Source of the DNA: Octopus bimaculoides
Lineage: Eukaryota
Direction of reading: 5' to 3'
DNA length: 64,000 nt
Assembly (NCBI RefSeq): GCF_001194135.2
Contig: NC_068990.1
Coordinates: forward strand, 48,387,558 to 48,451,557
Every line of letters begins with the position of its first letter. The first letter of the stretch is position 1. Below, piece by piece: positions 1,090 through 63,900 of the stretch. The translations under genes were made by a program, and so were the position numbers. Below the pieces are notes generated by a model. It was not told the origin of the DNA. It saw only the letters and a list, made by a program, of their open reading frames with translations, and ran no database searches.

Positions 1090-3585
1090 ATTTTCGGTCA
1101 TCATGATCATCATCGTTTAACATCCGTTTTCCATGCTAGCATGGATTGGACAGTTCAACCAGGTTCTGGGAAGCCAGGAGGCTGCACCAGGCTCCAGTCT
1201 GATCTGGCAGTGTTTCTACAGCTGGATGCCCTTACTGATGCCAACCACTCCTTGAGTGTAGTGGGTGCTTTTTACATGTCACCGGCACAAGGGCCAGAGG
1301 AGGCTGGCAACAGCCACGATCAGTTGGTGCGTTTTACATGCCACCAACACAGAAGCCAGTCAAGGCAGCACTGGCATCGGCCACGTTCGGATGGTGCTTT
1401 TCACGTGCCACTGGCATGGGTATCACAACTACAATTTCCATTTGATTTTCATTTTGATGTTGATGTACTTGACTCAATAGGTCTCCTCAAGCACAGTAGG
1501 TCACCCTACGATCCAAGGTACATTTGGATGGGCTGGGGCTGGTTATGTGAAACTGGTGTAGGATACAGCCATGAACTCACTTTATTTGCCGGGTCTTCAC
1601 AGTCACAGCATATCTCCAGAGGTCTCGGTCTTTTGTCATTGCCTCTATGAGGCCCAATGTTTGAAGGTCATGATTAACCACCTCATCCCATGTTTTCCTG
1701 GGCCTACCTTTACCCCGGATTCCTTCAACTGTTTGGGAGTGGCACTTCTTCACACAGCTCTCCTCATCAATCCATATTACATGACCATACCAACACAAAC
1801 GTCTCTCTTACATGCCAAATCCGATGCTTCTTATGTCTAACATTTCTCTCAGGGTGCTTACACTCTGTTGTGTGTGCACACTGACATTACACATCCAGTG
1901 GATCATGCTAGCTTCATTTCTTTCGAGCCTACGCATGTCCTCCGCAGTAGGGGTAGAAGCTTTTTAAACTTCGCCTAGGCTATTCTTATTATAGTGGTAA
2001 CACTCTGAGCATCCACCCCAACTACTAACTTGATCACCTAGGTAACGGAAGTTATCTACTTCTAGTTTCTCCCCCTGGAATGTGATGGAATCTGTTTTCT
2101 GAGGTGTTTTCTGTTTTCTGAGTGTTTATTGTCCCTGTGCATTTACCACACACAAAAACTATCTTCACAGTTAATCTTCCTTTGATGTTGCTGCACCTCT
2201 TATGTGTCCATAGCTTACACTGGGTCAATCTTATGGAGTTTCTGCCTACACCTTTTCTACAGATCGAGCAGGGCCACCTATCTGAGTGGGTGTGTGATAT
2301 GTTCGCCTTCCTACTTACTAGAACTTTGGTCTTTGCTACATTGATTCTAAACCTTGCTTCCACACCAAAAATTTCTTTTCTAGTTCTGGTAGTGATTCTG
2401 CTATGAGGGTCAGGTCATCAGCATAGCAGAGCTCCCAGGTGCAACCTGTCTTGAATTCCTCTGTTATTGCCTGGAGGACTATGATGAATAAAAGGGGACT
2501 GAGGGCTGAACCTTGGTGGACCCCTACTTCTACCTGGAATTCTTCACTATACTCATTGCCAATCCTAACCTTACTAACGGCCTCTGTATAGGGCCTGTAC
2601 AGCCCTTATTAACCATTCATCAATCCCCAGTTTCTGCATTGCCCACCAGATAAGAGATCGGGGGGGCCCTCTCAAAGGATTTCTCCAAGTCCACAAAAGC
2701 TAAGCATAGGGGTTTATCTTTAGCTAGGTATTTCTCCTGCAATTGTCGAACCAGGAATATAGCATCAGTAGTGCTTCTGCCCAACACAGACCGAACTGCA
2801 TTTCATCTAAGCAGACTCTCTCCCTAATGAGATGGGCTATGACCCTTTCCGTGACCTTCATCACCTGATCCAGCAGTTTGATACCCCTGTAGTTATTTCT
2901 ATCTAGAGCATCACCTTTACCCTTGTAGCAGTTGACTATGGTGCTGCTACGCCAGTCATTGGGTATAACTCACTCATGAACTACATGGTTTACAATGCGG
3001 GTGATGAGGTCATAGCCCACACCACCAGATGTTTTAAGCATCTCAGCAGTGATTCCTGATGGGCCGGGGGCTTTTCCTGGCTTCATACCCTTAATTGCTT
3101 TATCTACCAGGGAACTATCTATTCGGCTAGCTGGTCCTTCTACTGGGTCAACATTTGGCAGTCTCTCCTCCTCACATTTATTCTCTACGTTCAGCAATCT
3201 TTCATAAGGCTTCTCCAAGCATCTTTCTTTTCCAAATCATTAAAAGCAAGTGCACCATCATCCATGCGGACACATTTCTCTCCTGTGATATCACAATGTT
3301 CTCTCACACAGTTTTGCAATCCGAAATACCTCAGTTCTTTGGTCCTCACGTCGCTGGACATTGGCAAACTTCTTCTTTTCTGCTTCATACTTGGCTATGT
3401 ATACCTGCCACCCAACCTCCCTTTTAGCTACCTGGTACAGTTCCCTGCTACCCCTACCCTTCCAGGTTTTCCAGGCCTGTTTCTTTGCTCTAATGGCTTT
3501 GTCTACCATACTATTCCACCACCACATAACTCTAGGTCTGGAAGGGACTTTGCACCATCCGTAGACTTGGTCTGTGGCACTCCTT
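1090..3585 (-). mobile_element. RTE-clade LINE, 5'-truncated and decayed (linker, RT, C-terminus, 3' UTR and tail)
   Basis: Minus-strand translation gives AFVDLEKSF, VGVHQGSALSPLLF and YADD (2414-2425), then the C-terminal WYGHV...GRPRKTW...DRDLWR (ORF 1577-1798). The 3' end reads ...ccatgctagcatggaaaacggatgttaaacgatgatga. There are multiple frameshifts and stops. Confidence 0.93.
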
Positions 3586-3739
3586 CCATGAAAATCATGT
3601 CTAGCTATGGTGGGAGATATTACCTTGCTTTGAAACAAGATAAGGAAGAGAATTCAACGGCAAAAGACCTGCCTCGATGAAATAACAATAAAACAACTGA
3701 ATAGTAATAATAATGAAGGCCAGCACCGTTAAAACTGAT

Positions 3740-7308: not shown

Positions 7309-7353
<45 letters not shown>

Positions 7354-9460: not shown

Positions 9461-9729
9461 CTAAAATAAAACCTTCCATGGCAGCTATTTTACTAAATTC
9501 TCCATTATTTTCAAAGTTAAATGAAACAAAGTCAGTGTGTTTTCAATAGAAATAAGTTAACAAATAGATTAAATATTTGGATATGTTTGATTATTATTCC
9601 CTCTGATATTGTGTGTTTAATAACTCTAGAATTTGAACTGTTATGACAGTCAGATGTTACAACTATAACTATCTTCTCAATTGTGAGAGTACAGTAATAT
9701 TTAGTTTTAAATAAAGTTTTAAATGAGAC

Positions 9730-11670
9730 AGAGACTAAGGCAGACAACCAAAAAAAGGCAATGCTTGAATTCGAACAGCGCATAGTAACCAACTCTAACA
9801 GCAAAGTGTTCTGGAAGTATGTACATTCAAAGCAGAGACCTCACTCTCCAGTTGGTCCTCTTCGCAATCCCCACACAGGCCAGATTACGGACAATCCCAA
9901 AGAATGTGAAGAAATTATTGCTGGATGCTATGCAGGCATCTTTACTGTCGAAAATCAAAATGTTCCATTTCCATCACCTCTGACACTGGACTCTATAACT
10001 ACTATGAAATTTACACCAGCAATGCTACAATACCACCTTAAGAATAAATGTAACTATGCCTCTCTTGGTCTCGATGGTGTTACATACCTACTTCTGAAAC
10101 GTGGTGGGTACTTTCTTCTGAACCAGCTTTCACTATTCTTTCAATTCTGTCTTGACGATGGTGTTACTCCAGAGCAGTGGAAAACTGCCAGTGTTATCCC
10201 TCTGTTCAAAAAAGGTCACCGCACATCACCTGTCAACTATTGCCCCGTCAGTCTTACTAGCTGCATCGCCAAACTGATGGAATCTTGTGTCAGAGAAACC
10301 CTCTGGAACTTCTGGAAGTCTCACAGCCTCATCCAGCTGTCACAATTTGGATCTATTCCTAACTCCAGCTGCTGTAATCAACTCATTTAGTTTCTTGAGG
10401 ACATTACCTGAATCACTGATGGTGGCTCCTGGGTGAATGTTGTTTACCTTGACTTTGCTAAGGCTTTTAATTCTGTGCCACACAAAAGACTTATGGTGAA
10501 ACTCTCTGCAATCGGTGTAAGAGATGATTTCTATAACTGGTTGCTGAAGTCCTTCATTATCAGCCAAAAAGAGGTTGTCACAGTTCTAGGACAGCACTCT
10601 TCACTCTATGAGATGACATCTGGTGTACCACAGGGATCTGTTCTTGGGCCCCCTTTTATTTGTTGTATATATTAATGACATAGATGCCAACTTAAAGAAT
10701 GCCACAGTGCTGAAATATTCAGATGACATCAAGCTGTACCTCAAAATAAAAAGGACAGAATCTGTACACTATAGATCTTTATTGCAATCAGACCTGGACA
10801 CGATGCAGCAATGGATCATGGACTGGCAACTCAAGCTGGCTGTGGACAAATGTACCACCATGCATTTTGGGAGGAAAAACCCAGTGTCTACTTACTTTCT
10901 TCTGAACTACAACACTAATCTCAAAAAGTCTTCTTGCGAACGTGAACTGGGCATTATTGTTGACAGTGATTTGCGTTGGATAAACACATTGCTACAATTG
11001 CTAAGAAGGCTGAGGGTGTCTTGGCATCACTTACCAAGTCCTTCGTGAGCCGCTCTCTGGCTATTTATCTGAGGCTTTAGATAGTTATGGTGCGGCCTCA
11101 CCTGGAATTTGCATGTCTGGTCTGGAACCACTATCTTGCCCAGGATATTAATCGTCTGGAAACCTTTCAGCAATGTGCAACCAAGAGAATACCCTCCATC
11201 AGGCATTTGCCATATTCTGAATGCCTTACTTCCCTGGGCATGGATACATTGAAACTATGACGTCTAGCAACTGACGTGGCAGACGCCCATAAAATTATTA
11301 ACCATCTTACTAACAATAACTCTGAGCATCTTTTCAAATTCCACCTGTCTAACACCCGTGGACATGTTTACAAAGTCAGAAAACAGCACAGCTCCCATGA
11401 CTTTCGGAAACACATTTTCACACTAAGAGTTGCTAAAGTATGGAACAAACTGCTGGCATCAGTTGTTAGTTGTCGGAGCACTGCATCCTTCAAAACTTCC
11501 TGAGATTCGCCAACACTACACCTGATTTTCTCCCCTTCATACACACGCAAGCATGTATCTGACTCATGCACTGTTCACTTTCCAAACATTTGTACAATAC
11601 TGCATATGCTTTATATGCACTTTTGACAAGTTGTAGTGCACCTGAGCACTATATACAATAATTTCATTAT
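9730..11670 (+). mobile_element. CR1-clade LINE, 5'-truncated and decayed (RT + C-terminus + 3' UTR)
   Basis: Translates to KVFWKYV, WKTASVIPLFKKG, NYCPVSLTS, YLDFAKAFNSVPH, GVPQGSVLGP, KYSDD (YSDD 10716-10727) and RGHVYKV...FTLRVAKVWN. It contains stops and frameshifts. Confidence 0.92.
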
Positions 11671-24459: not shown

Positions 24460-25395
24460 TATAACTTACCTTACAAGCTTTTCTAGGTCTAGTGAATTAT
24501 TATCAAAATTATAATGATTTGCTAAAAAAGAATGTGAAGTGGAATGGTCAAATAATTGTCAAAAAATGTTTGACAATATTAAAAACTATTAATATCAGAT
24601 TTGTTGCTGGCTCATTTCAATCCTGCAGCAGAGATTGTTGTAGCTTCTGACACTTCTGAATATGGCATAGGAGCAATATACACAAGTATAAAGACGGTAA
24701 TATGAAGGCAGTGGTTCATGCCTCACATTCTCTGATAGTAGCAGAGAAAAACTGTAGTCAAATAGAGAAAAAAGTTCTAGCAATCATTTTTGCCATGAAG
24801 GTATTTCACAGATTTTTGCACAGTAGAAGTTTTCAGCTACAAATTGATTACCAACCATTATCAATTTTTGGGTGAAGAAAGGAATTCCTACCCATACTGC
24901 AAATAGGACACAATGCTGGGGTATGATATTATTGAATTACGACTTTAAAAGAGGTTAAGCCATGCAGATTGTTAATCAAGGCTAATTCCAAAAAATATGG
25001 AACTATTCAAAGATACTGTGACTGCTGCACTGCAAACAGAAAATGAAATAAAAAAACATTTTGTGTATCATCATTTGGGAGCTGCCAGTAACTGTTCAAG
25101 ATATAAAATTAAAATCAGACAATGACAAATTCATTGCAAAGATGAAAGAAATATTGAAGATAAAAGAAAGTAAAAATATACATAACACAAATGTGAAACA
25201 TTTTTCTCTGTGTGATAACGTGTTGATATACGCACAAAGAATTGTAGTGCCAGCTGCGCTACAAAAGTATATATTAAGTGAATTTCATATGGGACACCCA
25301 TGGATTTCAAGAATGAAATCAGTAATGAGGAGCTATGTGTACTGCCCTATTATGGACCATGATTTTGAACAATTGCTGAAATCCTGCAGAGGTTG
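24460..25395 (+). mobile_element. Gypsy/Ty3 pol fragment (connection, RNase H, integrase HHCC), decayed
   Basis: Translates to LQAFLGLVNYY, LLAHFNP...VASDTSEYGIGA, AEKNCSQIEKKVLAIIFA and RIVVP...EFHMGHP.ISRMKSVMRSYVY.P.MD.D.EQLLKSCRGC. Confidence 0.85.
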
Positions 25396-25688
25396 TGAGA
25401 ATGGACTAGCCGATCTTGTATAAAGTAGTAGCATGTTTGACTGAGGGTAAGAGATGAGAAATTGCAGGAAATCGAAAGGTGTTGTTTGTGAGTTCATGGA
25501 ATTGCAAGAAATTATTGAGAAGTTGCTATAGTTTCTTGAGGATTGTTTTGGATTAGTTACAGTTGTTGGTAGAGTATTTGGGAATACATTAAGTGGAGAC
25601 AGTTGGTGTCTACCCTGTTCTGCAGTACTATATATCACACTATGTTAGTGCACGACACTAAGGTGACATATACAGAAACCACGCCATA

Positions 25689-31253: not shown

Positions 31254-31824
31254 CTAAAAAAAGAACATAAATGAAAGAGGATTAAAGAAATAGGTGAATG
31301 AGCAAGTTAGTAGAGGATAATAGTCAAGTAAAGTAACATGTTATAAGCAATATAAACATTTTCCATTGAATGTAAAAGCTGATTAAAGGAGAATTCAGAA
31401 AGCAGAACAGATGTGGATTATGTTCAAATAAATTATCTTGAACTTGGGTGATAACAAAAACAGTGAATTTTTCTGCAACTGTTATTTCTGTGATTATTCA
31501 AAAAACAATTTCCCAAGATTAACTTGTATTTTATTTACAAGTTATTAGCATTTGTCTTTTAAAATACTTCATAGACATTCAAAATTAGTCTTTAGTAAAA
31601 TATTTTTTACTTCCATAGTTATTAATATTTTTCTCAAAACCTTTTCATTTATAATTAAAAAGAATCATAAAAAAACATTAACCGTGATATGTTTTTATCA
31701 AGTATAAAAATATTTTAGCAAATTCAGTAGATGAAGTTGAAATATAGAGTTGAAAGTTTTAGAGCAGAAAACAGCAAGGTTTAAAAAATATATATTGCAA
31801 AGCTAAGATAATAAAAATTCTAAC

Positions 31825-32685
31825 CTGTTTTCTTTGTTTGTAAGACATCATCTTTTGATGGAAGATCCGTGACAAAATAGGAATCAATCGGCTGTTCATT
31901 GTCTGACCCATCTGATGAGGGTATATTCCTGGACACAGAAGATGGACTTAAAGGAAACAATTCTTGTTCTGATCCAGTATCTGCTTGATAAGACGTTGGA
32001 ATTTTACCACTGTCAATTGAGGCAGAAATGTTTTGTGTAGTTAGTGCAGAGTGGCTACCATCAATGGATAGTGACATATTTTTTGGAGAAGATGGACTAG
32101 ATTTTGCCAGATCTAAAAGTCGTGGTTTAGAGTCAACCTGGAGTGATAAGCCTGGTGATGAAAATTTTGGGCTGCTTTGTTCAATTTCATTACTATTAGA
32201 TGAGCTTCCAGCCATATTATTGCTTGGTTGCTTTTCTTGTGCAAAATTTGACACTGGAGAAAGTTTTTTGTGGCCATTCTGTTCAACCCCCATGTCTCCT
32301 TCAATAGTTTTGTCTTGTGTGGACAGAGATGATGTTGATATGTTCCCAGATTTTTTGGCAGCAGAAAGTATTGGTGAGGTGGCTATGGAAGAGCTTGAGT
32401 CACTGTCTGAATCTCGATATGGCCGACTACTAACCCTCTTAACACAAACGCGTTCTTTCTCTTCACTAGGGTTGCCGCCTCCATATGACCCAATGAGGCG
32501 AGACAGTCGGAAGCTGTCTGCTTCAGAAGGAAAACCAACACGTTCTACCTCTGTGTCATGCAGTGTTGAACCTCCAACTGGTGAATTCTCCTGACTACTG
32601 TCTCTTTCCAGTTCATCAGGTGGCGGTACACTTCCATTTGTTATTGCTCGACGGATTTCTTCTGTTACAGCTTTGCCAGCATTTC
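31825..32685 (-). CDS. Large internal exon (861 bp, phase 1-1) encoding a Ser/Pro/acidic low-complexity region of an unidentified protein
   Basis: Acceptor ttttcctttggtgcAG at 32686-32687 and donor CAG|gttaga at 31823-31824. The frame is open for 287 codons (GNAGKAVTEEIRRAITNGSVPPPDELERDSSQE...DDVLQTKKT), has higher GC than the flanks and is not repeat-like. Confidence 0.82.
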
Positions 32686-33352
32686 CTGCACCAAAGGAAA
32701 ATATTGAAAATTATATTTTAATTAAATAGCTTTAAAACATAAAATGGCATGCATGATATTTATTTTATTTGCACCTGTGTAAAACCTTATTCAAAAAGTC
32801 CAACGTAAGAAAATCATGATGTGAAAAGAACCAGCTAATAGCAGTAAAAATACTACAGTAGCAAACAGTAGAAATGTTGTTGCATACCCCCAAGTTAGCC
32901 CTGATTCAGCTAACAAAAATTCTAGCTGTTGTAACACTTTTTCAAATATGTATTTAGGACTACATTATCCAATGTGTAAATATCAAAATTTTCTGTTTGG
33001 ATGTTATTTTCAAACAACTCTGAGACCTACGAAACAAAATTGCTCCTTTTAAAGCGTTCATATTCAAATTAAACTGCCCATCATAATTTTAACACCAGTT
33101 TGATATAGAAATAAATGTAAAAGTTAATTACTTGATTAATTCCCTCTGAATTGTTGACTATATTCAAAATTAAGGGAAGCTCAAGCAGCAAATTTCATAA
33201 GGAATATTTGGTCATAATTTCATATTATTTCACTTGAATATCTCATCTCAATACTTTAAAATACCAAACTACATTTTAATTACAAATTTGTTTGGTTCAC
33301 TACTAGAATATTGTTCTTCCTTCCCTCTTCATATATTTTCTGCTACTGCCAG

Positions 33353-41626: not shown

Positions 41627-41993
41627 GGTAGTAATGACTTGTAGGTACATGATATTTTATCATGCAACCATAATATACTATAAAGTGCACTTTTTATATT
41701 ACTTGTTGAGGTTATCTCTACAGATATTCTTTAGAAATTATAGCCAGCACTGATTTTTGTTACTACATTTCGTATACAAGATGTCAGATGTAAATAAACA
41801 ATGAGACTGAAGATGAGAAAAGGGTACTGACTTATAGAAACATTTAATATACTTTATAGTATATTATGGTTGCATAATGAAATTCCGCATACCTACAAGC
41901 CATTAGTATTTGTGTACCCAGCTTCCAGGAATGCATTTAATATGTAAATTGGTATATCCAATAACCAGAATCCACTGTATACAGTGGCTATTT

Positions 41994-42103
41994 AAGTAAT
42001 GTGTTTGAGGATGATTAAAGGGTTAGATGGGTGCTGATGAAGGGGAAAAGCCCCCGAAATATGGTATATACACCCATTATTCTTTTCTCTTCCTAACATA
42101 CCT
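41994..42103 (+). mobile_element. 110-bp hammerhead-containing unit flanked by 10-bp direct repeats (putative TSD GTGGCTATTT)
   Basis: gtggctattt occurs at 41984-41993 and 42104-42113, and the unit carries the hammerhead motif centrally. Confidence 0.55.
42027..42077 (+). ncRNA. Minimal type I hammerhead ribozyme, Penelope/retrozyme-style variant
   Basis: atgggtg (42027-33) CTGATGA (42034-40) a gggg aaaagc cccc GAAA (42056-59) tat ggt ata T A (42070) cacccat (42071-77). Stem I is a perfect 7 bp, stem II 4 G-C bp, stem III A-U closed, and the cleavage triplet is AUA. Confidence 0.75.
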
Positions 42104-42112
42104 GTGGCTATT

Positions 42113-42521
42113 TCGTTAAAAGATTTAAGACTTTTGCAGGTGATCCCTATTTCAAAACCTAGAGTTTTTTTTTGAGAGAGGGTATGAGAGAGGGTAAGAG
42201 AGAGCAGGGAGAAAGAGATTTTGTTGCTAGTTTGAAGTCCCCCATAACTTATAATTGTTGCTGTTGTATGTTGTGAGTTGAATAGGAAAATATGTGATTT
42301 CATCATCATCATTTAATGTCCATTGAATGAGGATGATGAAATCACATTTTCTTATGCAACTCACAACACGGTTATGCAACAACAATTATAACAGTTATGA
42401 AGGACTTCAAAATGGCAACCAAATCTCTCTCTCTTTCTCTCTGTCTCTCTCTTTCTCTCTCATAAAAACTCCAGGTTTTTAAAATAGGTATCACCTGCAA
42501 AAGTCTTAAACCTTTGAACAA
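42113..42521. repeat. ~400-bp inverted duplication (hairpin) with almost no loop
   Basis: 42113-42318 is the diverged reverse complement of 42321-42521 (e.g. tttaagacttttgcaggtgat / atcacctgcaaaagtcttaaa), centred at 42319-42320. Confidence 0.88.
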
Positions 42522-44148
42522 ATGATATAAAAATGAATCTTCCTAAATTTTCTTTTTTAATAGTGAGATTTTGCAAGTGTATGTGTGTGTGTGTTTATGT
42601 TCATCTGAGGTTCATGCTTTTTCATTTACATTTTTGCTTGTATTTTAAAATCAGTATAATTGTTCTCAATTTCTAGATTCTAAATGAGTTGACAATGTTG
42701 GTCTGAGTAGTTGATAATATTAGTGGATGTAATCCTTACTTCAGGCCTTGGGTGTATGCTTGTGTGTGTATGATTTTGTTAAATTTTTCAGGACTTTTGA
42801 GTTATGGCATTTTTCTTTTGTTTTTCTATTATCTTGAAAGAAGTGGCTGAAACTTGTGGTCTTGTATTTTGTTTTGTTCCCTTGTCTAAATTTGTGACTG
42901 CTTGTTGTGATGGTGTTAGTTTAATGCCTTTTCTGTAAAGACACTTGAACATACTTTCTGTATCGGCAATGTAGCCTATTTTCATTTTCTCTGATGGCAT
43001 GTATAAATTTTGCTTAGTGAGTTACTTGAAATCAAACAGTATTTGATTTCCAAAATTTTCCGAATTAACAAAATACAAGGATAAAATAACCACTACAAAT
43101 AATATTCACTTACAGTCTAGTCTTCAGAAATATAGAAATAATGTAATAAAAAAATAAAAAAGAATTTATATTTCAGACAGTAGTAATATGAGAAAAAATG
43201 TCAGTGAGGCCTCATAAATATGCTACTGAAACTCAAAGAAATTCTATGAAAAATATATAGAGTTTAAATTTAATTTCTTTTATTTTATCACCCCATTGTG
43301 TGCTAACACACTGAAACAGGAAATACTCTAAAAATATTACATCAAATGAAAGAACTCTATGCTTTGATCTTAAAGTGCTAACTATAAAGGTCAAGGATTT
43401 GTGAGCCAGTCCAAATTTTGATCATAGAATAAAACTTCTTTGTTGTCAAATGTTTCAACCAAAAACTATGAATAATTAATTGGAACAGATTTGTTTCTTC
43501 CTGGCAAATTTTTAACTTCAATTTTCCATGCTAACAGAAATTGACTGATCCTGTAAATTAATGTTTTCACAAATTGCTATCCTTTATGCAGCAGTGATAC
43601 CCATATTTTGGTTTGTCAGACTACTTTATGTTCAGAGGAATAGATTCAATTGGGGAAATGTAAGCTGTCGAACTGCAAGTGGATTTCTAGGCAGTTTAAT
43701 GCTTCACCATTAAGATTCTCCCCCCCCTCTCTCCATCACCACATTCTGGTAGTCTTTTTCTTCAAATAGCTGCAATCAAGCAACCAAGTTCTCAATTCTA
43801 TGTCATGTGACTCTGTTAATAACACCAATGTAGTTAAGAGGTCTGTACTCTCTATTAGAGTGTAGAGGTTTCCAAAATATAACATATGACTTGGTGTTCA
43901 ATACAAAAATGGTGGCCAGCAAAGCCTATCTTGCTTTGAGCACCAATAATAGAGATGGATGGAATGTGCCTATAAATCTCCTCTTTGGTTTTTAAATCTT
44001 CATGAAAAGCTTAGTGCATATATCAAGGCAATCTTGAAGCTACTTCACAATCCAGGAGAAAAATGCTCTTTACTACACTCTCCATTATAAAATACACTAG
44101 AGAAGTAATTACAAAATGTAAAAAATTCTGCAGAACAAAATAACATAA

Positions 44149-50155: not shown

Positions 50156-50291
<136 letters not shown>

Positions 50292-51101: not shown

Positions 51102-51146
<45 letters not shown>

Positions 51147-55679: not shown

Positions 55680-56152
<473 letters not shown>

Positions 56153-56820: not shown

Positions 56821-57602
56821 CTATAAAACGGAAAGAGTAAAGGCAGTGCGTACAGCAAGAGAGAATGAGAGAGTAGTACAATAAACTAGTTCAAGAGGGC
56901 GACAGAATTAACTCAGAGAAAAGAAAGGCAAAACTGATGAAAGCCAATAATTGATTTATTGATTATTACTTTGAACAGTGTCTTGTTAATTTTTTTGTGT
57001 TTTTGTTTTTACTTATCTTTAAAGATGTTACTAAAAGATGTTTTACAGTCAATAAATAAAATTAAAAGGGTGAGTGAAATGTTATCAATATTACAAAAGT
57101 ATATAAGAAGGAAATATATAAGCCTATTGTAAATTTACAGTTTAAGTTGTTTGACAAATCATCTAATAGAAGAAGCTGCCTCACTAAGTTTCTTTGGAAG
57201 ACAGTTATGGCTTCCTTTCTTGAGATGATCGATTTGCTTTAAAATACTTACTATTTCACTACACAATGACACTGTAAAAATATAACCTCTTCTTGTTAAC
57301 CATTTAAGGCCACAATAAAACATTTGTAGGGCTATTGTCAATTAACAAAATGCTTATTCTCTTTCTCTCTATCTATCTCTCTATCTCTCTATCTCTCTCT
57401 CTCTCTTTCTCTCTCACTGGAACAGGTAAAGTTGTTTTGTTAAATACTTGTGATGAAATATGAACTTACAAAATGCAAAAACTATATATATATATATGTA
57501 TGTCTATATGCTGCATAGTTTCCATAGATTTGTATAATGTTAGGTGCAAATATATTTAATTTAAATCATTGTTTCCAGTGCCCTTTTCTATCAAATTTAA
57601 TA

Positions 57603-57795
57603 TTCTTTTACTTGTTTCAGTCATCTGACTGCAGCCATGCCAGAGCACCGCCTTTAATCGAACAAATCAACCCTACAACTTATTCCTTGTAAGCCTAGTA
57701 CTTATTCTATCGGTCTATTTTGCTAAACCACTAAGTTACAGGGACGTAAACACACCAACATTGGTGTCAAGCAATGGTAGTGGGGACAAACACAG

Positions 57796-57829
<34 letters not shown>

Positions 57830-57950
57830 GACAAGCTTCTTTCAGTTTCTATCTACCAAATTCAGTCACAAGGTTTTGGCCCAATGTGCCGTACAGTGGG
57901 ACTGAACCCAGAACCATGTGGTTGGGAAGCAAGCTTCTTACCACAGAGCC
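57603..57950 (-). mobile_element. SINE family B copy (internal deletion), inverted relative to 55680-56152
   Basis: tcttttacttgtttcagtcat...aagcctagtacttattctatcggtc...gaaccatgtggttgggaagcaagcttcttaccaca. Confidence 0.85.
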
Positions 57951-58950: not shown

Positions 58951-59335
58951 NAATGGAGGGCGCGAAGCCACTTCAGTGTTAGCCTGTCTCACCTAGATAT
59001 GTTATGAGTTTCAAGCCATATTCGGTCTTCCCGCTTCAGCCATATATAGAAGCTGGCTTTTTCGACCGCCTCCTGTATCCTCCTTATCAGTTTTCTCAGT
59101 TCCGAGTTTGAAAACGCAAATCTTCTCTTGAATAGCGTTGTCATTTTTCTTTCAATGAAGCCTCTAGCCCCCACTGCCAGATGGTAGTACTCGACAGTCC
59201 ATCCCTGTTCTCTGTACTCTTCGATTAGTTTTTCATATCTCTTCTCCTTTCGTTTCTCTGCATTGTCGATGTTTTCTTCCCATGGTACTGTCAGTTCTAG
59301 CAAGATTCCTATTCTCTGTTCTGTATAATCACAAC
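58951..59335 (-). mobile_element. HERO/NeSL-type RLE non-LTR retrotransposon C-terminus, 5'-truncated, apparently young
   Basis: Uninterrupted LELTVPWEENID.AEKRKEKRYEKLIEE..EQGW......AVGARGF...EAVEKASFYIWLKR*, typical of the RLE domain of that group. CpGs are retained. Confidence 0.8.
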
Positions 59336-59814
59336 GTTTGTAACTGCCATGCCAGTTTTAAAATGTGCCATATTTTATAAAACCACAATCATTAGTTTTA
59401 GAGCTTCTAAACATATCATTACATGCAACTTTTTTTTGGCAATTTTAAAATAATCACTGTATTTATGTTAACATTTTTAAATGGTTATAAACCCTAAGAG
59501 ACTGCAAACTCATTTCTTTCTAACAGATCTCCTTCATTCACTTAATGCTTCCAGACAATCTTAATCCTATTTTAGTAATCTTACTTCTTCTTTCAAATTT
59601 AATTTATTCTATGAGTCATTTAAATTTCTATTTTGCTAGGATTGCAAATTTAGCTGAGATATCTCCTTTGACTTAAAAGTCATCTTAAGTGTAGCCAATA
59701 CCAAATTTATGAAAATCTATGTCAGCAGTTTGAGTATTCTGACTTTTCTAAAAATATAATTTCTCATCCATATAACTATAAAAATAATTTACTGAAGATT
59801 CACTTATCCATCAT

Positions 59815-60990: not shown

Positions 60991-63900
60991 GATTACCAGC
61001 TGGTTGATGAAACAGCTCTCTCTCCCTCCAGCTGTCGCATCTATGATGATCCACAGAGCCAAAGGCAGGAGGGTCACATAGGCATTTTCAATAATTTGTA
61101 AATTGTGTAAGGTACATGCAACCAAGTCATGATCACTTTCAAGTTAAGATTATGATGGTTCACTCATTAAATGAAATACCTAAGTATTTCCTTCTCTCAA
61201 ATATACATCTTGCTTGATACTTAATTAGAGATGTTCATACTACTTATAAGAAAAGACTAGCCATGTTAAATTTAGTCTACTTGATTCAAGTAACTTGTTT
61301 TCAGCTTCAAACTTTTATTGGACAATTAAGTTCAATTGTTTAACTCACCCAGTTAAATTATGTCTTTCTTAGTACAAATTTATTGCTGAGATGAACAATA
61401 ATAAATACTTTATTACTCTGATATAGTTAGTGATATAGTTGTGATTGCTTCTAATCTTAGGTTATTTGAAGATGATTTACTTAAGTAACTTAGTGCTGAC
61501 ATATTGTATCCATGGAACATTTTAAAAAACTCGCAAAAAAAATATTCACTAAGGAAAGTCAATATTAATCAACAACTAATCTTCTGTAATTGTCTGAGAA
61601 ATGATAACTCCAAATATTTCAGTATTATTCTGACCTCATCAGCAAAGTATGTCATCACAGTATTTTTTTTTTTTTTTTTTTGTGAATGGTTTCGTCAGAG
61701 GAAGAGAGTCAGTGATCATGAAATTTTCGAATCTCCAAAACTGATGGAAGAGAGGAGGAAGTCATCCCCAAATGAAATAGAGTTCTTTAGAGAAAAACTA
61801 AGGGCTAGGTGATAATGATAAACTGAGCAAGAGATTAAAAGTTTAAGTTCACCAGCCAAGTAACCCAAAGTAAAGATGTACAATCTTATTCATTTGCTCC
61901 CTGGTTCTTAGCATTGATTACAGTAATTGTAAACAAGGTAAGGTCACTATATCTAGTAAACAAGAGATACTGAATCAATTGGTTTACACATCAATTGAAC
62001 TCAGAATCAATTGGTCTAACCATAATAGCACTAGATTTTAAAGTTTTACTTCTTTGGAGATTCAGCATTGTCTTCATCATCATCGTTTTTATATCTGCTT
62101 TTTTCAGATGCTGTTCCTGATGCCAACTATTACTTGTTTTTCAGGTGTAAGGCACTTTATCCCATATTTCTGCATGTCAAACTGCTACCAGATGTTTTAT
62201 TTAGGGGAGACATAAATATGCCATCACCTCTGAAACAGTGTCAATACATACACAAAATTATACAGAAAAGTGTAGTTAAACAATGGGCTTCTATACAGTT
62301 TTGTTCAATCAAATTTCACTCAAAACATTGGTCAGCCCAAGATATAGTAAAGACACTTTCTCAAAGTGCCATGCAGTATGGCAAAACCCAAAGCAATTTG
62401 ATGGCAAAGGTAACTTCTTCCCTTTAGAGTTAACATCTTAACCAGACAACCATATATGCATCTAACATTGTTGTATGAAAATACTTTCAACCCAACCCAA
62501 GATTTTTTCTGCACAAGCTCTTTTGACTATACAAGAATGCCTTGATATATATGAGTTAATCTGTTCCTGGAGACCACTCATAATGTAAAGACTCATAAAG
62601 CAAAGCAATAATTCCCCATAGTAGCAATGTTGTAAATTGTAATTCATTCCCAGAAAATTATTTTACCTATAAAATTTATAATGCTCATAAATAATGGCAA
62701 TAAAACAACAGTAGAATGTAAATTATAAAGAATGTTAAGATCATTTATGATAAAAAATATTATTATTATTATTACAATTGTATTCTGAATCACTTTCACT
62801 GGCACTAGACTCGTGCACATAATCACTTGTAGATGTGATTGCTGATTCACAAGCACTCATAGATGGATTTGTAAATTTCTTCTTAAAAAACATATATCTA
62901 AATTTGTTTGCTCAGAGGCTTTTTTTGCTCCCTATAAATTTCTCAGTAACATGCAGAAGCATTTGTTATGATAGTAGAAACTTTTGCACTTCATTCAAAA
63001 TTTGCATCTTGTGCTTTAACCTTTTTATATTTATTATAAAATAAAATTCGTAAATCTGGGGTCTCATAAAGTGGATCCTTGTAAAGTGAGGTATTACTGT
63101 ATAATGTTTTTTTTTTTACTTCTTTTACAGTAACTTCTTCAAACACCTCGTGTATAAATTATATATATCACACACTAGAGCATGATGCAGTCTTGGATAA
63201 TTCAGATCCAGTCAAACTGTCCAACCCATACCAGCATGGAACATGGTGATGATGACATCTGTGTGTGTGGGGGGGTGTAATTTTATCTATTATATAAATT
63301 TAATATAAATTTATTTAAATATAAATTCATCTATAATTATTTTCCAGGTGTTTATCTATAGTTATTTTCCAGTTGTCAGCCTTGGTCCACTAGCAGCCAT
63401 TTCTAGCGTTTTGTTCATCAACAACATGTCTGAGGAAAGAATTACAGGACAAATTCTACTGGCAAGGCCTACAAGTAAACCTTGAATGAGATCATTGGAT
63501 AATATCCATAGTCTCTGTCTTTCTTGAAGATCCAGATGGATAATATGCTGAAGTTGCTTTTGCTAGGTGTTCTCAGACAGAACAACATTGTCCAAGATAG
63601 AAGTGTACTATTTGAGAGAGCCATTTCTAGCAGGTCAAACAACAATGTCAAGGTTCCTTCAATGCTTCAGAATTTCTCCAGTCTTAACTAATGATGTTAC
63701 CAGTATAACAGTGAGCTGGTTAGATTATGGGAAAGTTCCCAGCCATCATTCTTTGCAATAAGTTAACAACAGCTTTACAGTAGATTATACCCCCCCCCAC
63801 CACCACCACCACCACCAATATACAATTACAGAATTATCTGGTGATTCCACTATACCCACTCCAGTTCTGTAGGTTTTCAGCCATTAGGTGGAGGTTGCTA

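What the first reader, a model, noticed from the sequence alone, without database searches (positions are those of the whole stretch)
41984..42113. Near-intact minimal hammerhead ribozyme inside a 110-bp unit bounded by 10-bp direct repeats: a candidate tiny retrozyme-like element
Seen: the + strand folds as a type I hammerhead. It has a perfect 7-bp stem I (atgggtg/cacccat), CUGAUGA, one extra A, a 4-bp G-C stem II, GAAA, a short nearly self-complementary stem III (AUAU-GGU-AUAU) and an AUA site (predicted cut after 42070). The flanks pair imperfectly and extend stem I (e.g. tgtttgagga with tcctaaca). The unit is bracketed by identical GTGGCTATTT. Established: minimal type I hammerheads with weak or palindromic stem III occur in Penelope-like element LTRs and metazoan retrozymes, and can cleave as dimers. 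Inference: this is a very small non-autonomous ribozyme retroelement inserted with a TSD. No Penelope ORF is visible in the window, and the motif is antisense to the host gene.
Basis: partly seen in the sequence, partly recalled or inferred. Interest (0 to 1): 0.82.

Follow-up and report, generated by a model that had tools for sequence, protein, structure and literature searches.

The report
Solo minimal hammerhead relic in octopus intron
A complete small hammerhead self-cleaving RNA motif of the type carried by Penelope-like retroelements sits as a single 110-bp unit, flanked by a 10-bp repeat, in a large octopus intron; it is most likely an ordinary retroelement remnant, not a new kind of element.

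Summary
The sequence features are real. At 42027-42077 (+) there is a complete type I hammerhead: 7-8 bp stem I, CUGAUGA, one extra A, GGGG/CCCC stem II, GAAA, a 4-bp all-A-U stem III, A17, and a predicted cut at 42070|42071. GTGGCTATTT flanks a 110-bp unit.

A match this good is expected about 2e-4 times per window, but a few times in a Gb-size genome. The flanking repeat alone has p about 0.02.

The extra A between positions 9 and 10.1, the G10.1-C11.1 pair and a helix III that is unstable as a monomer but near-palindromic are the published hallmarks of Penelope-like-element (PLE) minimal hammerheads. These are mostly dispersed single motifs.

The window is Octopus DNA, and Penelope elements are abundant in octopus genomes. 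The motif lies antisense in a >31 kb intron of the orthologue of O. sinensis LOC115215841.

I found no second copy, tandem repeat or PLE ORF in the window, and no copy in 70 kb of extra octopus DNA. Copy number, covariation and an empty orthologous site could not be tested with these tools.

Verdict: probably a solo relic of a hammerhead-bearing retroelement, either a truncated PLE end or a retrozyme monomer. The kind is known, so interest is modest. "Tiny retrozyme" is only partly supported.

The parts
41984..41993 (.). Left copy of the 10-bp direct repeat GTGGCTATTT (putative target-site duplication). Its first 4 nt overlap a 16-nt palindrome, 41972-41987.
   Evidence: (D9)
41994..42026 (+). 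Purine-rich 5' flank of the unit. It pairs imperfectly with the 3' flank (closing helix after a 2-nt UA bulge).
42027..42033 (+). Hammerhead stem I, 5' strand (AUGGGUG)
42034..42040 (+). Catalytic core C3-A9 (CUGAUGA)
42041..42041 (+). Unpaired extra A between A9 and G10.1, a hallmark of PLE minimal hammerheads
   Evidence: PMC4209133; the same feature in coral min-HHRs
42042..42055 (+). Stem II GGGG/CCCC with hexaloop AAAAGC; G10.1-C11.1 present
42056..42058 (+). Core G12 A13 A14
42059..42069 (+). Stem III AUAU/AUAU with GGU loop (A15.1-U16.1 closing pair). It is unstable as a hairpin (+0.6 kcal/mol). It is near-palindromic, so two copies can form a 10-bp intermolecular helix (-6.6 kcal/mol).
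42070..42071 (+). A17 and C1.1: the predicted self-cleavage site lies between these two bases
   Evidence: hammerhead numbering (established knowledge)
42071..42077 (+). Stem I, 3' strand (CACCCAU)
42078..42103 (+). Pyrimidine-rich 3' flank of the unit
42104..42113 (.). Right copy of the direct repeat GTGGCTATTT; it abuts the 411-bp foldback that starts at 42112

Best explanation
The 110-bp unit is a solo, probably inert remnant of a hammerhead-bearing retroelement. It is either the 3'-terminal/pLTR piece of a heavily 5'-truncated Penelope-like element (PLE) or a monomer of a PLE-dependent non-autonomous 'retrozyme'. It was retro-inserted into a large intron of an octopus gene, in antisense orientation, with a 10-bp target-site duplication.

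If the + strand is transcribed, the RNA can fold into a type I hammerhead and cut itself between A42070 and C42071, leaving a 2',3'-cyclic phosphate and a 5'-OH. Its helix III is four A-U pairs that do not hold as a hairpin. Efficient cleavage would therefore need a second copy in trans to form the dimeric, extended helix III, as in newt and PLE hammerheads.

Shown: the motif, its statistics, the class hallmarks and the genomic context. Inferred: the origin by retro-insertion, the dimer requirement, and cleavage itself.
For: - The core is complete and all three helices are in the right register. It is the only hit in the window, with an expectation of about 2e-4 per window.
- Three features that my descriptor did not select match the published, descriptor-independent hallmarks of PLE min-HHRs: a nucleotide between 9 and 10.1, the G10.1-C11.1 pair, and a palindromic helix III (PMC4209133).
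- The same paper says most such motifs occur as dispersed single elements, probably from truncated PLEs.
- Natural min-HHRs with the identical string CUGAUGA-A-GGGG...CCCC-GAAA exist as multi-copy families in low-GC contigs from a series of related JGI metagenomes. I take these contigs to be coral host DNA from memory of the sample series; no tool output gave the sample source.
- Helix III is unstable as a monomer, whereas the dimer is favoured: -37.6 versus -30.6 kcal/mol.
- The + strand folds far better than the - strand, -39.0 versus -26.4.
- The window is Octopus DNA. Penelope is among the most abundant, and recently active, TE groups in octopus (PMC13282606, PMC8967140).
- PLEs show heavy 5' truncation and TSDs of variable length (PMC8557442).
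- Retrozyme consensus lengths of 51-972 bp, with dispersed monomers of which about 43% are intronic, are reported (10.64898/2026.07.22.740005).
- The flanking 10-bp repeat has p about 0.02.
Against: - There is no second copy and no tandem or inverted partner in the window.
- There is none in 70 kb of other O. bimaculoides DNA.
- No ORF-level homologue of the unit exists in a 5.8-billion-protein collection.
- No PLE RT/GIY-YIG remnant is nearby.
- No Rfam hammerhead model reports it even at E<=10. The same is true of a bona fide min-HHR from those metagenome contigs, so this is uninformative.
- Helix I (7-8 bp) and helix III (4 bp plus a 3-nt loop) are longer than in typical PLE min-HHRs.
- A few matches of this quality are expected by chance per Gb-scale genome.
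Confidence: 0.6

Rival explanations
1. A chance hammerhead look-alike. AT-rich, hairpin-prone intronic DNA happens to place CUGAUGA and GAAA in the loop of a local inverted repeat. There is no ribozyme ancestry or activity.
For: - Loose hammerhead descriptors hit 0.93 times per Mb-strand in random sequence. Extrapolation gives about 8 matches of the observed quality in a 2.7 Gb genome.
- The locus is full of local inverted repeats (41629-41908 and 42112-42522), so a 7-bp stem I is cheaper here than in a Markov model.
- CTGANGA..GAAA cores are over-represented in the window (9 against 3.8 expected), and the other eight are not hammerheads.
- The unit is single copy in everything I could search.
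Against: - The expectation per window is about 2e-4, and about 0.5 per genome once G10.1-C11.1 is required.
- The class-specific extras (extra nucleotide at 9/10.1, all-G-C helix II in a 33% GC genome, near-palindromic helix III, flanking 10-bp repeat with p about 0.02) are independent of the descriptor.
- Hammerhead-bearing Penelope elements are abundant in octopus, so real copies should far outnumber chance ones.
Confidence: 0.2
2. One reading: a member of a dedicated, currently or recently mobile family of very small (~110 nt) non-autonomous retrozymes. They would be processed by their own hammerhead, circularised and copied back by PLE enzymes.
For: - The unit is discrete, 110 bp between 10-bp repeats, within the 51-972 bp range reported for animal retrozyme consensuses.
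- It folds as a quasi-rod hairpin on the + strand only.
- Octopus Penelope families with recent insertions exist.
Against: - Animal retrozymes are defined by tandem repeats, which are needed to excise a monomer with two cuts. This is one copy with no tandem partner.
- No other copy turned up in 134 kb of octopus DNA in total.
- No trace appeared in ORF-based searches.
- A helix III that is unstable as a monomer makes a lone copy a poor self-cleaver.
Confidence: 0.12
3. A small DNA-level foldback or MITE-like element (imperfect terminal inverted repeats plus TSD), or a hairpin RNA precursor, whose loop resembles a hammerhead by coincidence.
For: - The unit ends AAGTAATGT.../...ACATACCT are loosely inverted, and the whole unit folds as a hairpin.
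- It sits between two other inverted-repeat structures, one starting exactly at the right repeat.
Against: - The flank complementarity is not beyond what composition gives (16.6% of shuffles).
- It relies on G.U pairs, so the DNA and the - strand pair much worse (-26.4 versus -39.0).
- The three hairpin structures share no sequence.
- This reading needs the same improbable coincidence for the hammerhead core as the chance rival.
Confidence: 0.05
4. An exapted host ribozyme (like the intronic HH9/HH10 of amniotes) that cleaves an antisense or intronic transcript to regulate the host gene.
For: It is intact and intronic.
Against: - It lies on the strand opposite to the host pre-mRNA.
- It lacks a stable helix III and recognisable loop-loop contacts.
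- No conservation data are available.
- No Rfam HH9/HH10 match was found.
Confidence: 0.03

Closest known systems
Minimal hammerheads (min-HHRs) of Penelope-like elements (Cervera & de la Pena 2014, PMC4209133; Lunse et al. 2017, not held in the library)
   Same: - Type I topology and a full catalytic core.
- An unpaired nucleotide between A9 and G10.1, and the G10.1-C11.1 pair.
- A weak, near-palindromic helix III that points to action as a dimer.
- No obvious loop1-loop2 contacts.
- Occurrence as a dispersed single motif in an invertebrate genome rich in Penelope elements.
- The core plus helix II string is identical to multi-copy min-HHRs in low-GC metagenome contigs that I take to be coral host DNA.
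   Different: - Helix I is 7-8 bp (usually 4-5).
- Helix III is 4 bp plus a 3-nt loop with a central G.G clash in the dimer (usually 1-2 bp with a 2-4 nt palindromic loop such as ACGU).
- H17 is A rather than C.
- No pLTR, RT or GIY-YIG sequence is detectable next to it.
Animal non-LTR retrozymes (Cervera & de la Pena 2020, PMC7229834; Li, Clavereau & Pollet 2026 preprint)
   Same: - Type I hammerhead.
- Low GC (39% for the unit).
- A flanking repeat longer than 4 bp.
- A short non-coding unit within the reported 51-972 bp consensus range.
- Dispersed intronic monomers are described.
   Different: - Not in a tandem array.
- Smaller than the classical 170-400 nt units.
- No evidence of a family, of RNA, or of circles.
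Newt satellite 2 / axolotl HHR_Amex1 hammerheads
   Same: Helix III is too weak for the monomer to be active; a palindromic helix III allows an active dimer.
   Different: Those sit in ~330-bp tandem satellites with conserved loop-loop tertiary contacts and reach >100,000 copies.
CChMVd (+) hammerhead with extra A10 (De la Pena & Flores 2001, cited in PMC4209133)
   Same: An extra A between A9 and G10.1 is tolerated in a natural, active hammerhead.
   Different: It is a type III viroid ribozyme, unrelated in context.

Membership tests
Hammerhead ribozyme, type I | Conserved core: C3 U4 G5 A6 N7 G8 A9, G12 A13 A14, A15.1-U16.1, H17 not G | tested here: met
   All positions are present at 42034-42040, 42056-42059 and 42069-42070. 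There is one insertion (A42041) at a position known to tolerate it.
Hammerhead ribozyme, type I | Three helices around the core, with the open ends in helix I | tested here: met
   Helix I is 7-8 bp, helix II 4 G-C bp and helix III 4 A-U bp. The hammerhead fold is -13.6 kcal/mol against an MFE of -15.3.
Hammerhead ribozyme, type I | Match to the curated covariance models (Rfam Hammerhead_1, HH9, HH10, etc.) | tested here: not met
   No hammerhead hit at gathering score or at E<=10 on 301 nt. Control: a min-HHR from the metagenome contigs is also missed under the same settings, so the models do not cover minimal variants.
Hammerhead ribozyme, type I | Site-specific self-cleavage | not testable with these tools
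   Needs in vitro transcription of the monomer and of a tandem dimer.
PLE-type minimal hammerhead | [quoted passage not shown] | tested here: met
   A42041; G42042-C42055. The criterion is from PMC4209133.
PLE-type minimal hammerhead | Very short, palindromic helix III / loop 3 (dimer-type) | tested here: inconclusive
   AUAUGGUAUAU is near-palindromic. The hairpin is unstable (+0.6 kcal/mol) and the intermolecular duplex is -6.6. However, it is longer than the usual 1-2 bp and has a central G.G mismatch.
PLE-type minimal hammerhead | Located in the pseudo-LTR of a Penelope-like element, or alignable to one | tested here: not met
   The only RVT_1 match in the window (10623-11045) belongs to an RT fragment I read by eye as LINE-type. 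No GIY-YIG motif occurs in any frame. Alignment to an octopus PLE consensus could not be done because no library was available.
PLE-type minimal hammerhead | Belongs to a multi-copy consensus family with covariation in the stems | not testable with these tools
   No octopus genome is searchable by DNA. There is one copy in the 64 kb window and none in 70 kb of other loci. The ORF-based proxy search was empty.
Animal non-LTR retrozyme | Head-to-tail tandem repeats (at least a dimer), each unit with one hammerhead | tested here: not met
   TRF and repeat searches show no tandem copy.
Animal non-LTR retrozyme | Short non-coding unit, low GC, TSD longer than 4 bp when present | tested here: met
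   The unit is 110 bp with 39% GC. The flanking repeat is 10 bp, with p about 0.02. The size range of 51-972 bp is from the 2026 preprint.
Animal non-LTR retrozyme | Expressed as linear and circular RNA of unit length | not testable with these tools
   No transcriptome access.
MITE / foldback DNA element | Terminal inverted repeats clearly beyond chance, next to the TSD | tested here: not met
   The flank duplex is matched by 16.6% of shuffles and depends on G.U pairs; the - strand folds at -26.4 against -39.0.

The most novel reading that the evidence does not exclude
The unit is the first seen member of a cephalopod family of ultra-short (~110 nt), hairpin-shaped, PLE-mobilised retrozymes. 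Its hammerhead would work only between copies (A-U palindromic helix III), and the family would still be mobile alongside the recently active octopus Penelope elements and expressed as tiny circular RNAs.
Probability: 0.1. Interest if true: 0.5.

Novelty: new member of a known kind. Interest (0 to 1): 0.25.

Why it matters
If real, it adds cephalopods to the animals known to carry Penelope-type minimal hammerheads. In the literature I could search, no paper links hammerhead ribozymes with octopus. It also gives a clean, intact example with an unusually long helix I and a 4-bp A-U helix III, which could be used to test the monomer-versus-dimer rule.

It does not change the picture. Thousands of such motifs per invertebrate genome, mostly solo and attributed to truncated PLEs, have been described since 2014. 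Short monomeric retrozyme derivatives in introns are also already reported.

There is one practical point for scans. The Rfam hammerhead models miss this class, so descriptor-based searches are needed.

Tried and rejected
- **Rfam.** I ran it at gathering score and at E<=10. There was no hammerhead hit, only weak archaeal C/D-box snoRNA look-alikes caused by GAUGA/CUGAUGA strings. I rejected a snoRNA reading because no D box precedes the terminal stem. Controls on min-HHRs from the metagenome contigs show that Rfam misses this class.\n- **Other copies.** I tried the exact 51-mer and a 26-mer core with 3 mismatches, BLASTN with word size 7, and pattern scans of viral, metagenome and prokaryotic collections. 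I replaced it with Pfam on the long ORFs and a GIY-YIG regex.\n- **Literature.** Lunse et al. 2017 and the supplement of PMC4209133 are not held. A sequence-string search of papers returned only primers.\n- **Other CTGANGA..GAAA cores in the window.** They do not fold as hammerheads.\n- **tRNA-derived SINE idea.** No tRNA-like gene was found.\n- **A covariance model from the metagenome-contig min-HHRs.** Not built, because those were fished with the same core string and the test would be circular.

Full report
**What is there.**

The + strand at 42027-42077 reads AUGGGUG CUGAUGA A GGGG-AAAAGC-CCCC GAA A-UAU-GGU-AUA-U A CACCCAU. In standard hammerhead numbering:
- helix I is 7 bp, or 8 with a G.U pair at 42026/42078;
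- the core C3-A9 is intact;
- one unpaired A (42041) precedes G10.1;
- helix II is four G-C pairs with a hexaloop;
- G12 A13 A14 follow;
- helix III is A15.1-U16.1 plus three more A-U pairs and a GGU loop;
- H17 is A42070, so the cut falls between 42070 and 42071.

The topology is type I. My own descriptor scan finds it at every stringency and finds nothing else on either strand. GTGGCTATTT occurs at 41984-41993 and 42104-42113 and bounds 110 bp. The only corrections are that the helix II loop is AAAAGC and that helix I can be read as 8 bp.

**Is it more than chance?**

I simulated 380 Mb of order-2 Markov sequence with the window's composition.
- A loose descriptor (stems of at least 4/3/2 bp) hits 0.93 times per Mb-strand, or about 0.12 per window.
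- Stems of at least 6/4/3 bp gave 5 hits, and at least 6/4/4 bp gave none.
- Extrapolating the per-pair decay gives about 1.6e-3 per Mb-strand at the observed quality.
- That is about 2e-4 per window and about 8 per 2.7 Gb genome, or about 0.5 if G10.1-C11.1 is also required.

The motif is therefore highly significant for one window. It cannot be called real on motif statistics alone if many windows were screened.

The 10-bp flanking repeat is modest evidence. 2.1% of positions in this window have an exact repeat of at least 10 nt in the same geometry.

The extension of stem I by the flanks is present in the MFE fold. The flank-flank duplex is matched by 16.6% of shuffles and 2.5% of genomic controls. 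A purine-rich left flank simply faces a pyrimidine-rich right flank. The + strand folds much better than the - strand (-39.0 against -26.4 kcal/mol) because several pairs are G.U.

**What kind of hammerhead is it?**

Rfam reports no hammerhead, even at E<=10 on 301 nt.

To calibrate this, I scanned public collections for CTGATGAAGGGG-N(4-8)-CCCCGAAA. Fourteen low-GC contigs from a series of related JGI metagenomes carry it. I take these to be coral host DNA from memory of the sample series; no tool output gave the sample source. The contigs hold multi-copy minimal hammerheads of the form CUGAUGA-A-GGGG-UUUU-CCCC-GAAACGUC with a 4-bp helix I. Rfam misses these too under identical settings, so its silence says nothing about this class.

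Cervera and de la Pena (PMC4209133) list features of Penelope-like-element (PLE) minimal hammerheads that emerged without being in their descriptor:
- the G10.1-C11.1 pair;
- a palindromic 15.2-16.2/loop 3.

They also report that most motifs are dispersed single elements, probably truncated PLEs.

Helix III fits the class. As a hairpin it costs +0.6 kcal/mol and does not fold on its own. Two copies can form a 10-bp intermolecular helix of -6.6 kcal/mol with one central G.G clash. The homodimer is at -37.6 against -30.6 for two monomers.

There are differences from typical PLE min-HHRs:
- helix I is longer (7-8 against 4-5 bp);
- helix III is longer (4 bp plus a 3-nt loop, against 1-2 bp);
- H17 is A.

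**Context.**

The window is a 33% GC eukaryotic draft scaffold with N gaps and many microsatellites.
- A LINE RT fragment at 9.7-11.4 kb matches O. bimaculoides proteins at 68-80% identity.
- It also matches TE copies in three O. bimaculoides loci at 81-85% identity.
- The 296-codon open frame at 31823-32710 (-) is a real exon. It is 96% identical to residues 149-436 of O. sinensis LOC115215841 isoform X25, a 3005-aa protein whose N-terminus looks to me like a Rab-effector zinc finger. It is 74% identical to an Argonauta hians protein.
- Neither the upstream nor the downstream coding exons are in the window.

No PLE ORF is present. The only RVT_1 match (10623-11045) belongs to an RT fragment I read by eye as LINE-type; the Pfam scan does not distinguish RT subtypes. 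One ORF is an LTR-type integrase, and no GIY-YIG motif occurs in any frame.

The unit sits between two unrelated inverted-repeat structures: 41629-41686/41851-41908, and a 411-bp foldback at 42112-42522 that begins at the right repeat.

**Family evidence.**

I could not obtain any.
- There is one copy in the window.
- There is none in 70 kb of other octopus DNA.
- The viral, metagenome and prokaryote collections hold no close match.
- A protein-level proxy search with the ORF spanning the unit found nothing.
- The orthologous O. sinensis locus could not be fetched.

**Interpretation.**

The literature makes hammerhead-bearing retroelements the expected source.
- Penelope elements are among the most abundant octopus TE groups. 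In O. vulgaris, 30 families have recent insertions (PMC13282606, PMC8967140).
- PLEs are heavily 5'-truncated, make TSDs of variable length, and always carry hammerheads except in the Naiad/Chlamys clades (PMC8557442, PMC6765202).
- Animal retrozymes are now viewed as non-autonomous PLE derivatives. Their consensus lengths are 51-972 bp, and dispersed monomers are about 43% intronic in Xenopus (2026 preprint).

The most likely account (about 0.6) is a solo relic of such an element, inserted with a 10-bp TSD. Whether it is a truncated PLE end or a retrozyme monomer is unresolved. A lone copy with an unstable helix III is probably a poor self-cleaver and has no evident host role.

The rivals are:
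- a chance motif (about 0.2);
- an active dedicated mini-retrozyme family (about 0.12);
- a foldback/MITE with a coincidental core (about 0.05);
- an exapted host ribozyme (about 0.03).

**Verdict.**

The kind is known: a new member of the PLE/retrozyme minimal hammerheads, apparently not yet described for cephalopods in the papers I could search. Interest is modest, at 0.25.

Noticed in passing
window 42112-42522: A 411-bp near-palindromic foldback: the arms are about 79% complementary over 296 nt, with GA/TC microsatellite-like stretches inside. It begins exactly at the end of the right direct repeat of the hammerhead unit. It shares no sequence with the unit, and its origin is unknown.
   Followed up: partly
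window 41629-41686 and 41851-41908: A second inverted repeat (58-nt arms, 84% complementary, 164 nt apart) lies just upstream of the unit, next to an N gap and an (AT)n run.
   Followed up: no
window 31823-32710 (-): A large coding exon (296 codons, 42% GC), 96% identical to residues 149-436 of O. sinensis LOC115215841 isoform X25 (3005 aa) and 74% identical to an Argonauta hians 7722-aa protein. The protein's N-terminus looks to me like a Rab-effector zinc finger, and the body is highly repetitive. The neighbouring exons are outside the window, so both flanking introns exceed about 31 kb.
   Followed up: yes
window 9698-11447 (+) and 2055-3653 (-): Decayed LINE fragments: RVT_1 at 10623-11045, and a weak, sub-threshold PHD-finger match (19.9 bits against a cutoff of 24) at 2055-2363. 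They are 81-84% identical to copies in O. bimaculoides loci L033 and L035.
   Followed up: partly
window 25052-25420 (+): An Integrase_H2C2 zinc-binding domain fragment of an LTR retrotransposon.
   Followed up: no
window 57601-57833 (+), 55687-55800 (-): A SINE-like repeat (its translation reads ...EPRTMWLGSKLLTT...) is present twice in the window. It is 83-85% identical to copies in L033 and L035, and each copy is followed by an (AC)n/(TG)n run.
   Followed up: no
window 50176-50291: A perfect (TAG)38.7 microsatellite. There are several other long perfect tri- and dinucleotide runs, for example (GTA)15 at 51102 and (ATT)21 at 7310.
   Followed up: no
window, whole: CTGANGA-N(8-30)-GAAA core strings occur 9 times against 3.8 expected (0 of 100 shuffles reach 9). 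The eight others do not fold as hammerheads. The best of them (61607-61648, -) has only G.U-rich 3-6 bp stems.
   Followed up: yes
L002, L013, L019, L006, L008, L010, L007, L014, L001, L005, L017, L004 (JGI metagenome contigs Ga0126336-43, Ga0099816/21): These low-GC contigs, which I take to be coral host DNA from memory of the sample series, carry several multi-copy families of minimal hammerheads, CUGAUGA-A-GGGG-(U-rich loop)-CCCC-GAAACGUC, with a 4-bp helix I. None is reported by the Rfam hammerhead models. No long ORF lies next to them in L004 and L014.
   Followed up: partly
window 58992-59357 (-): A 122-codon open frame (...ELTVPWEENIDNAEKRKEKRYEKL...) with no Pfam match. It looks like a conserved transposon-derived protein fragment, and it lies next to an N gap.
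   Followed up: no
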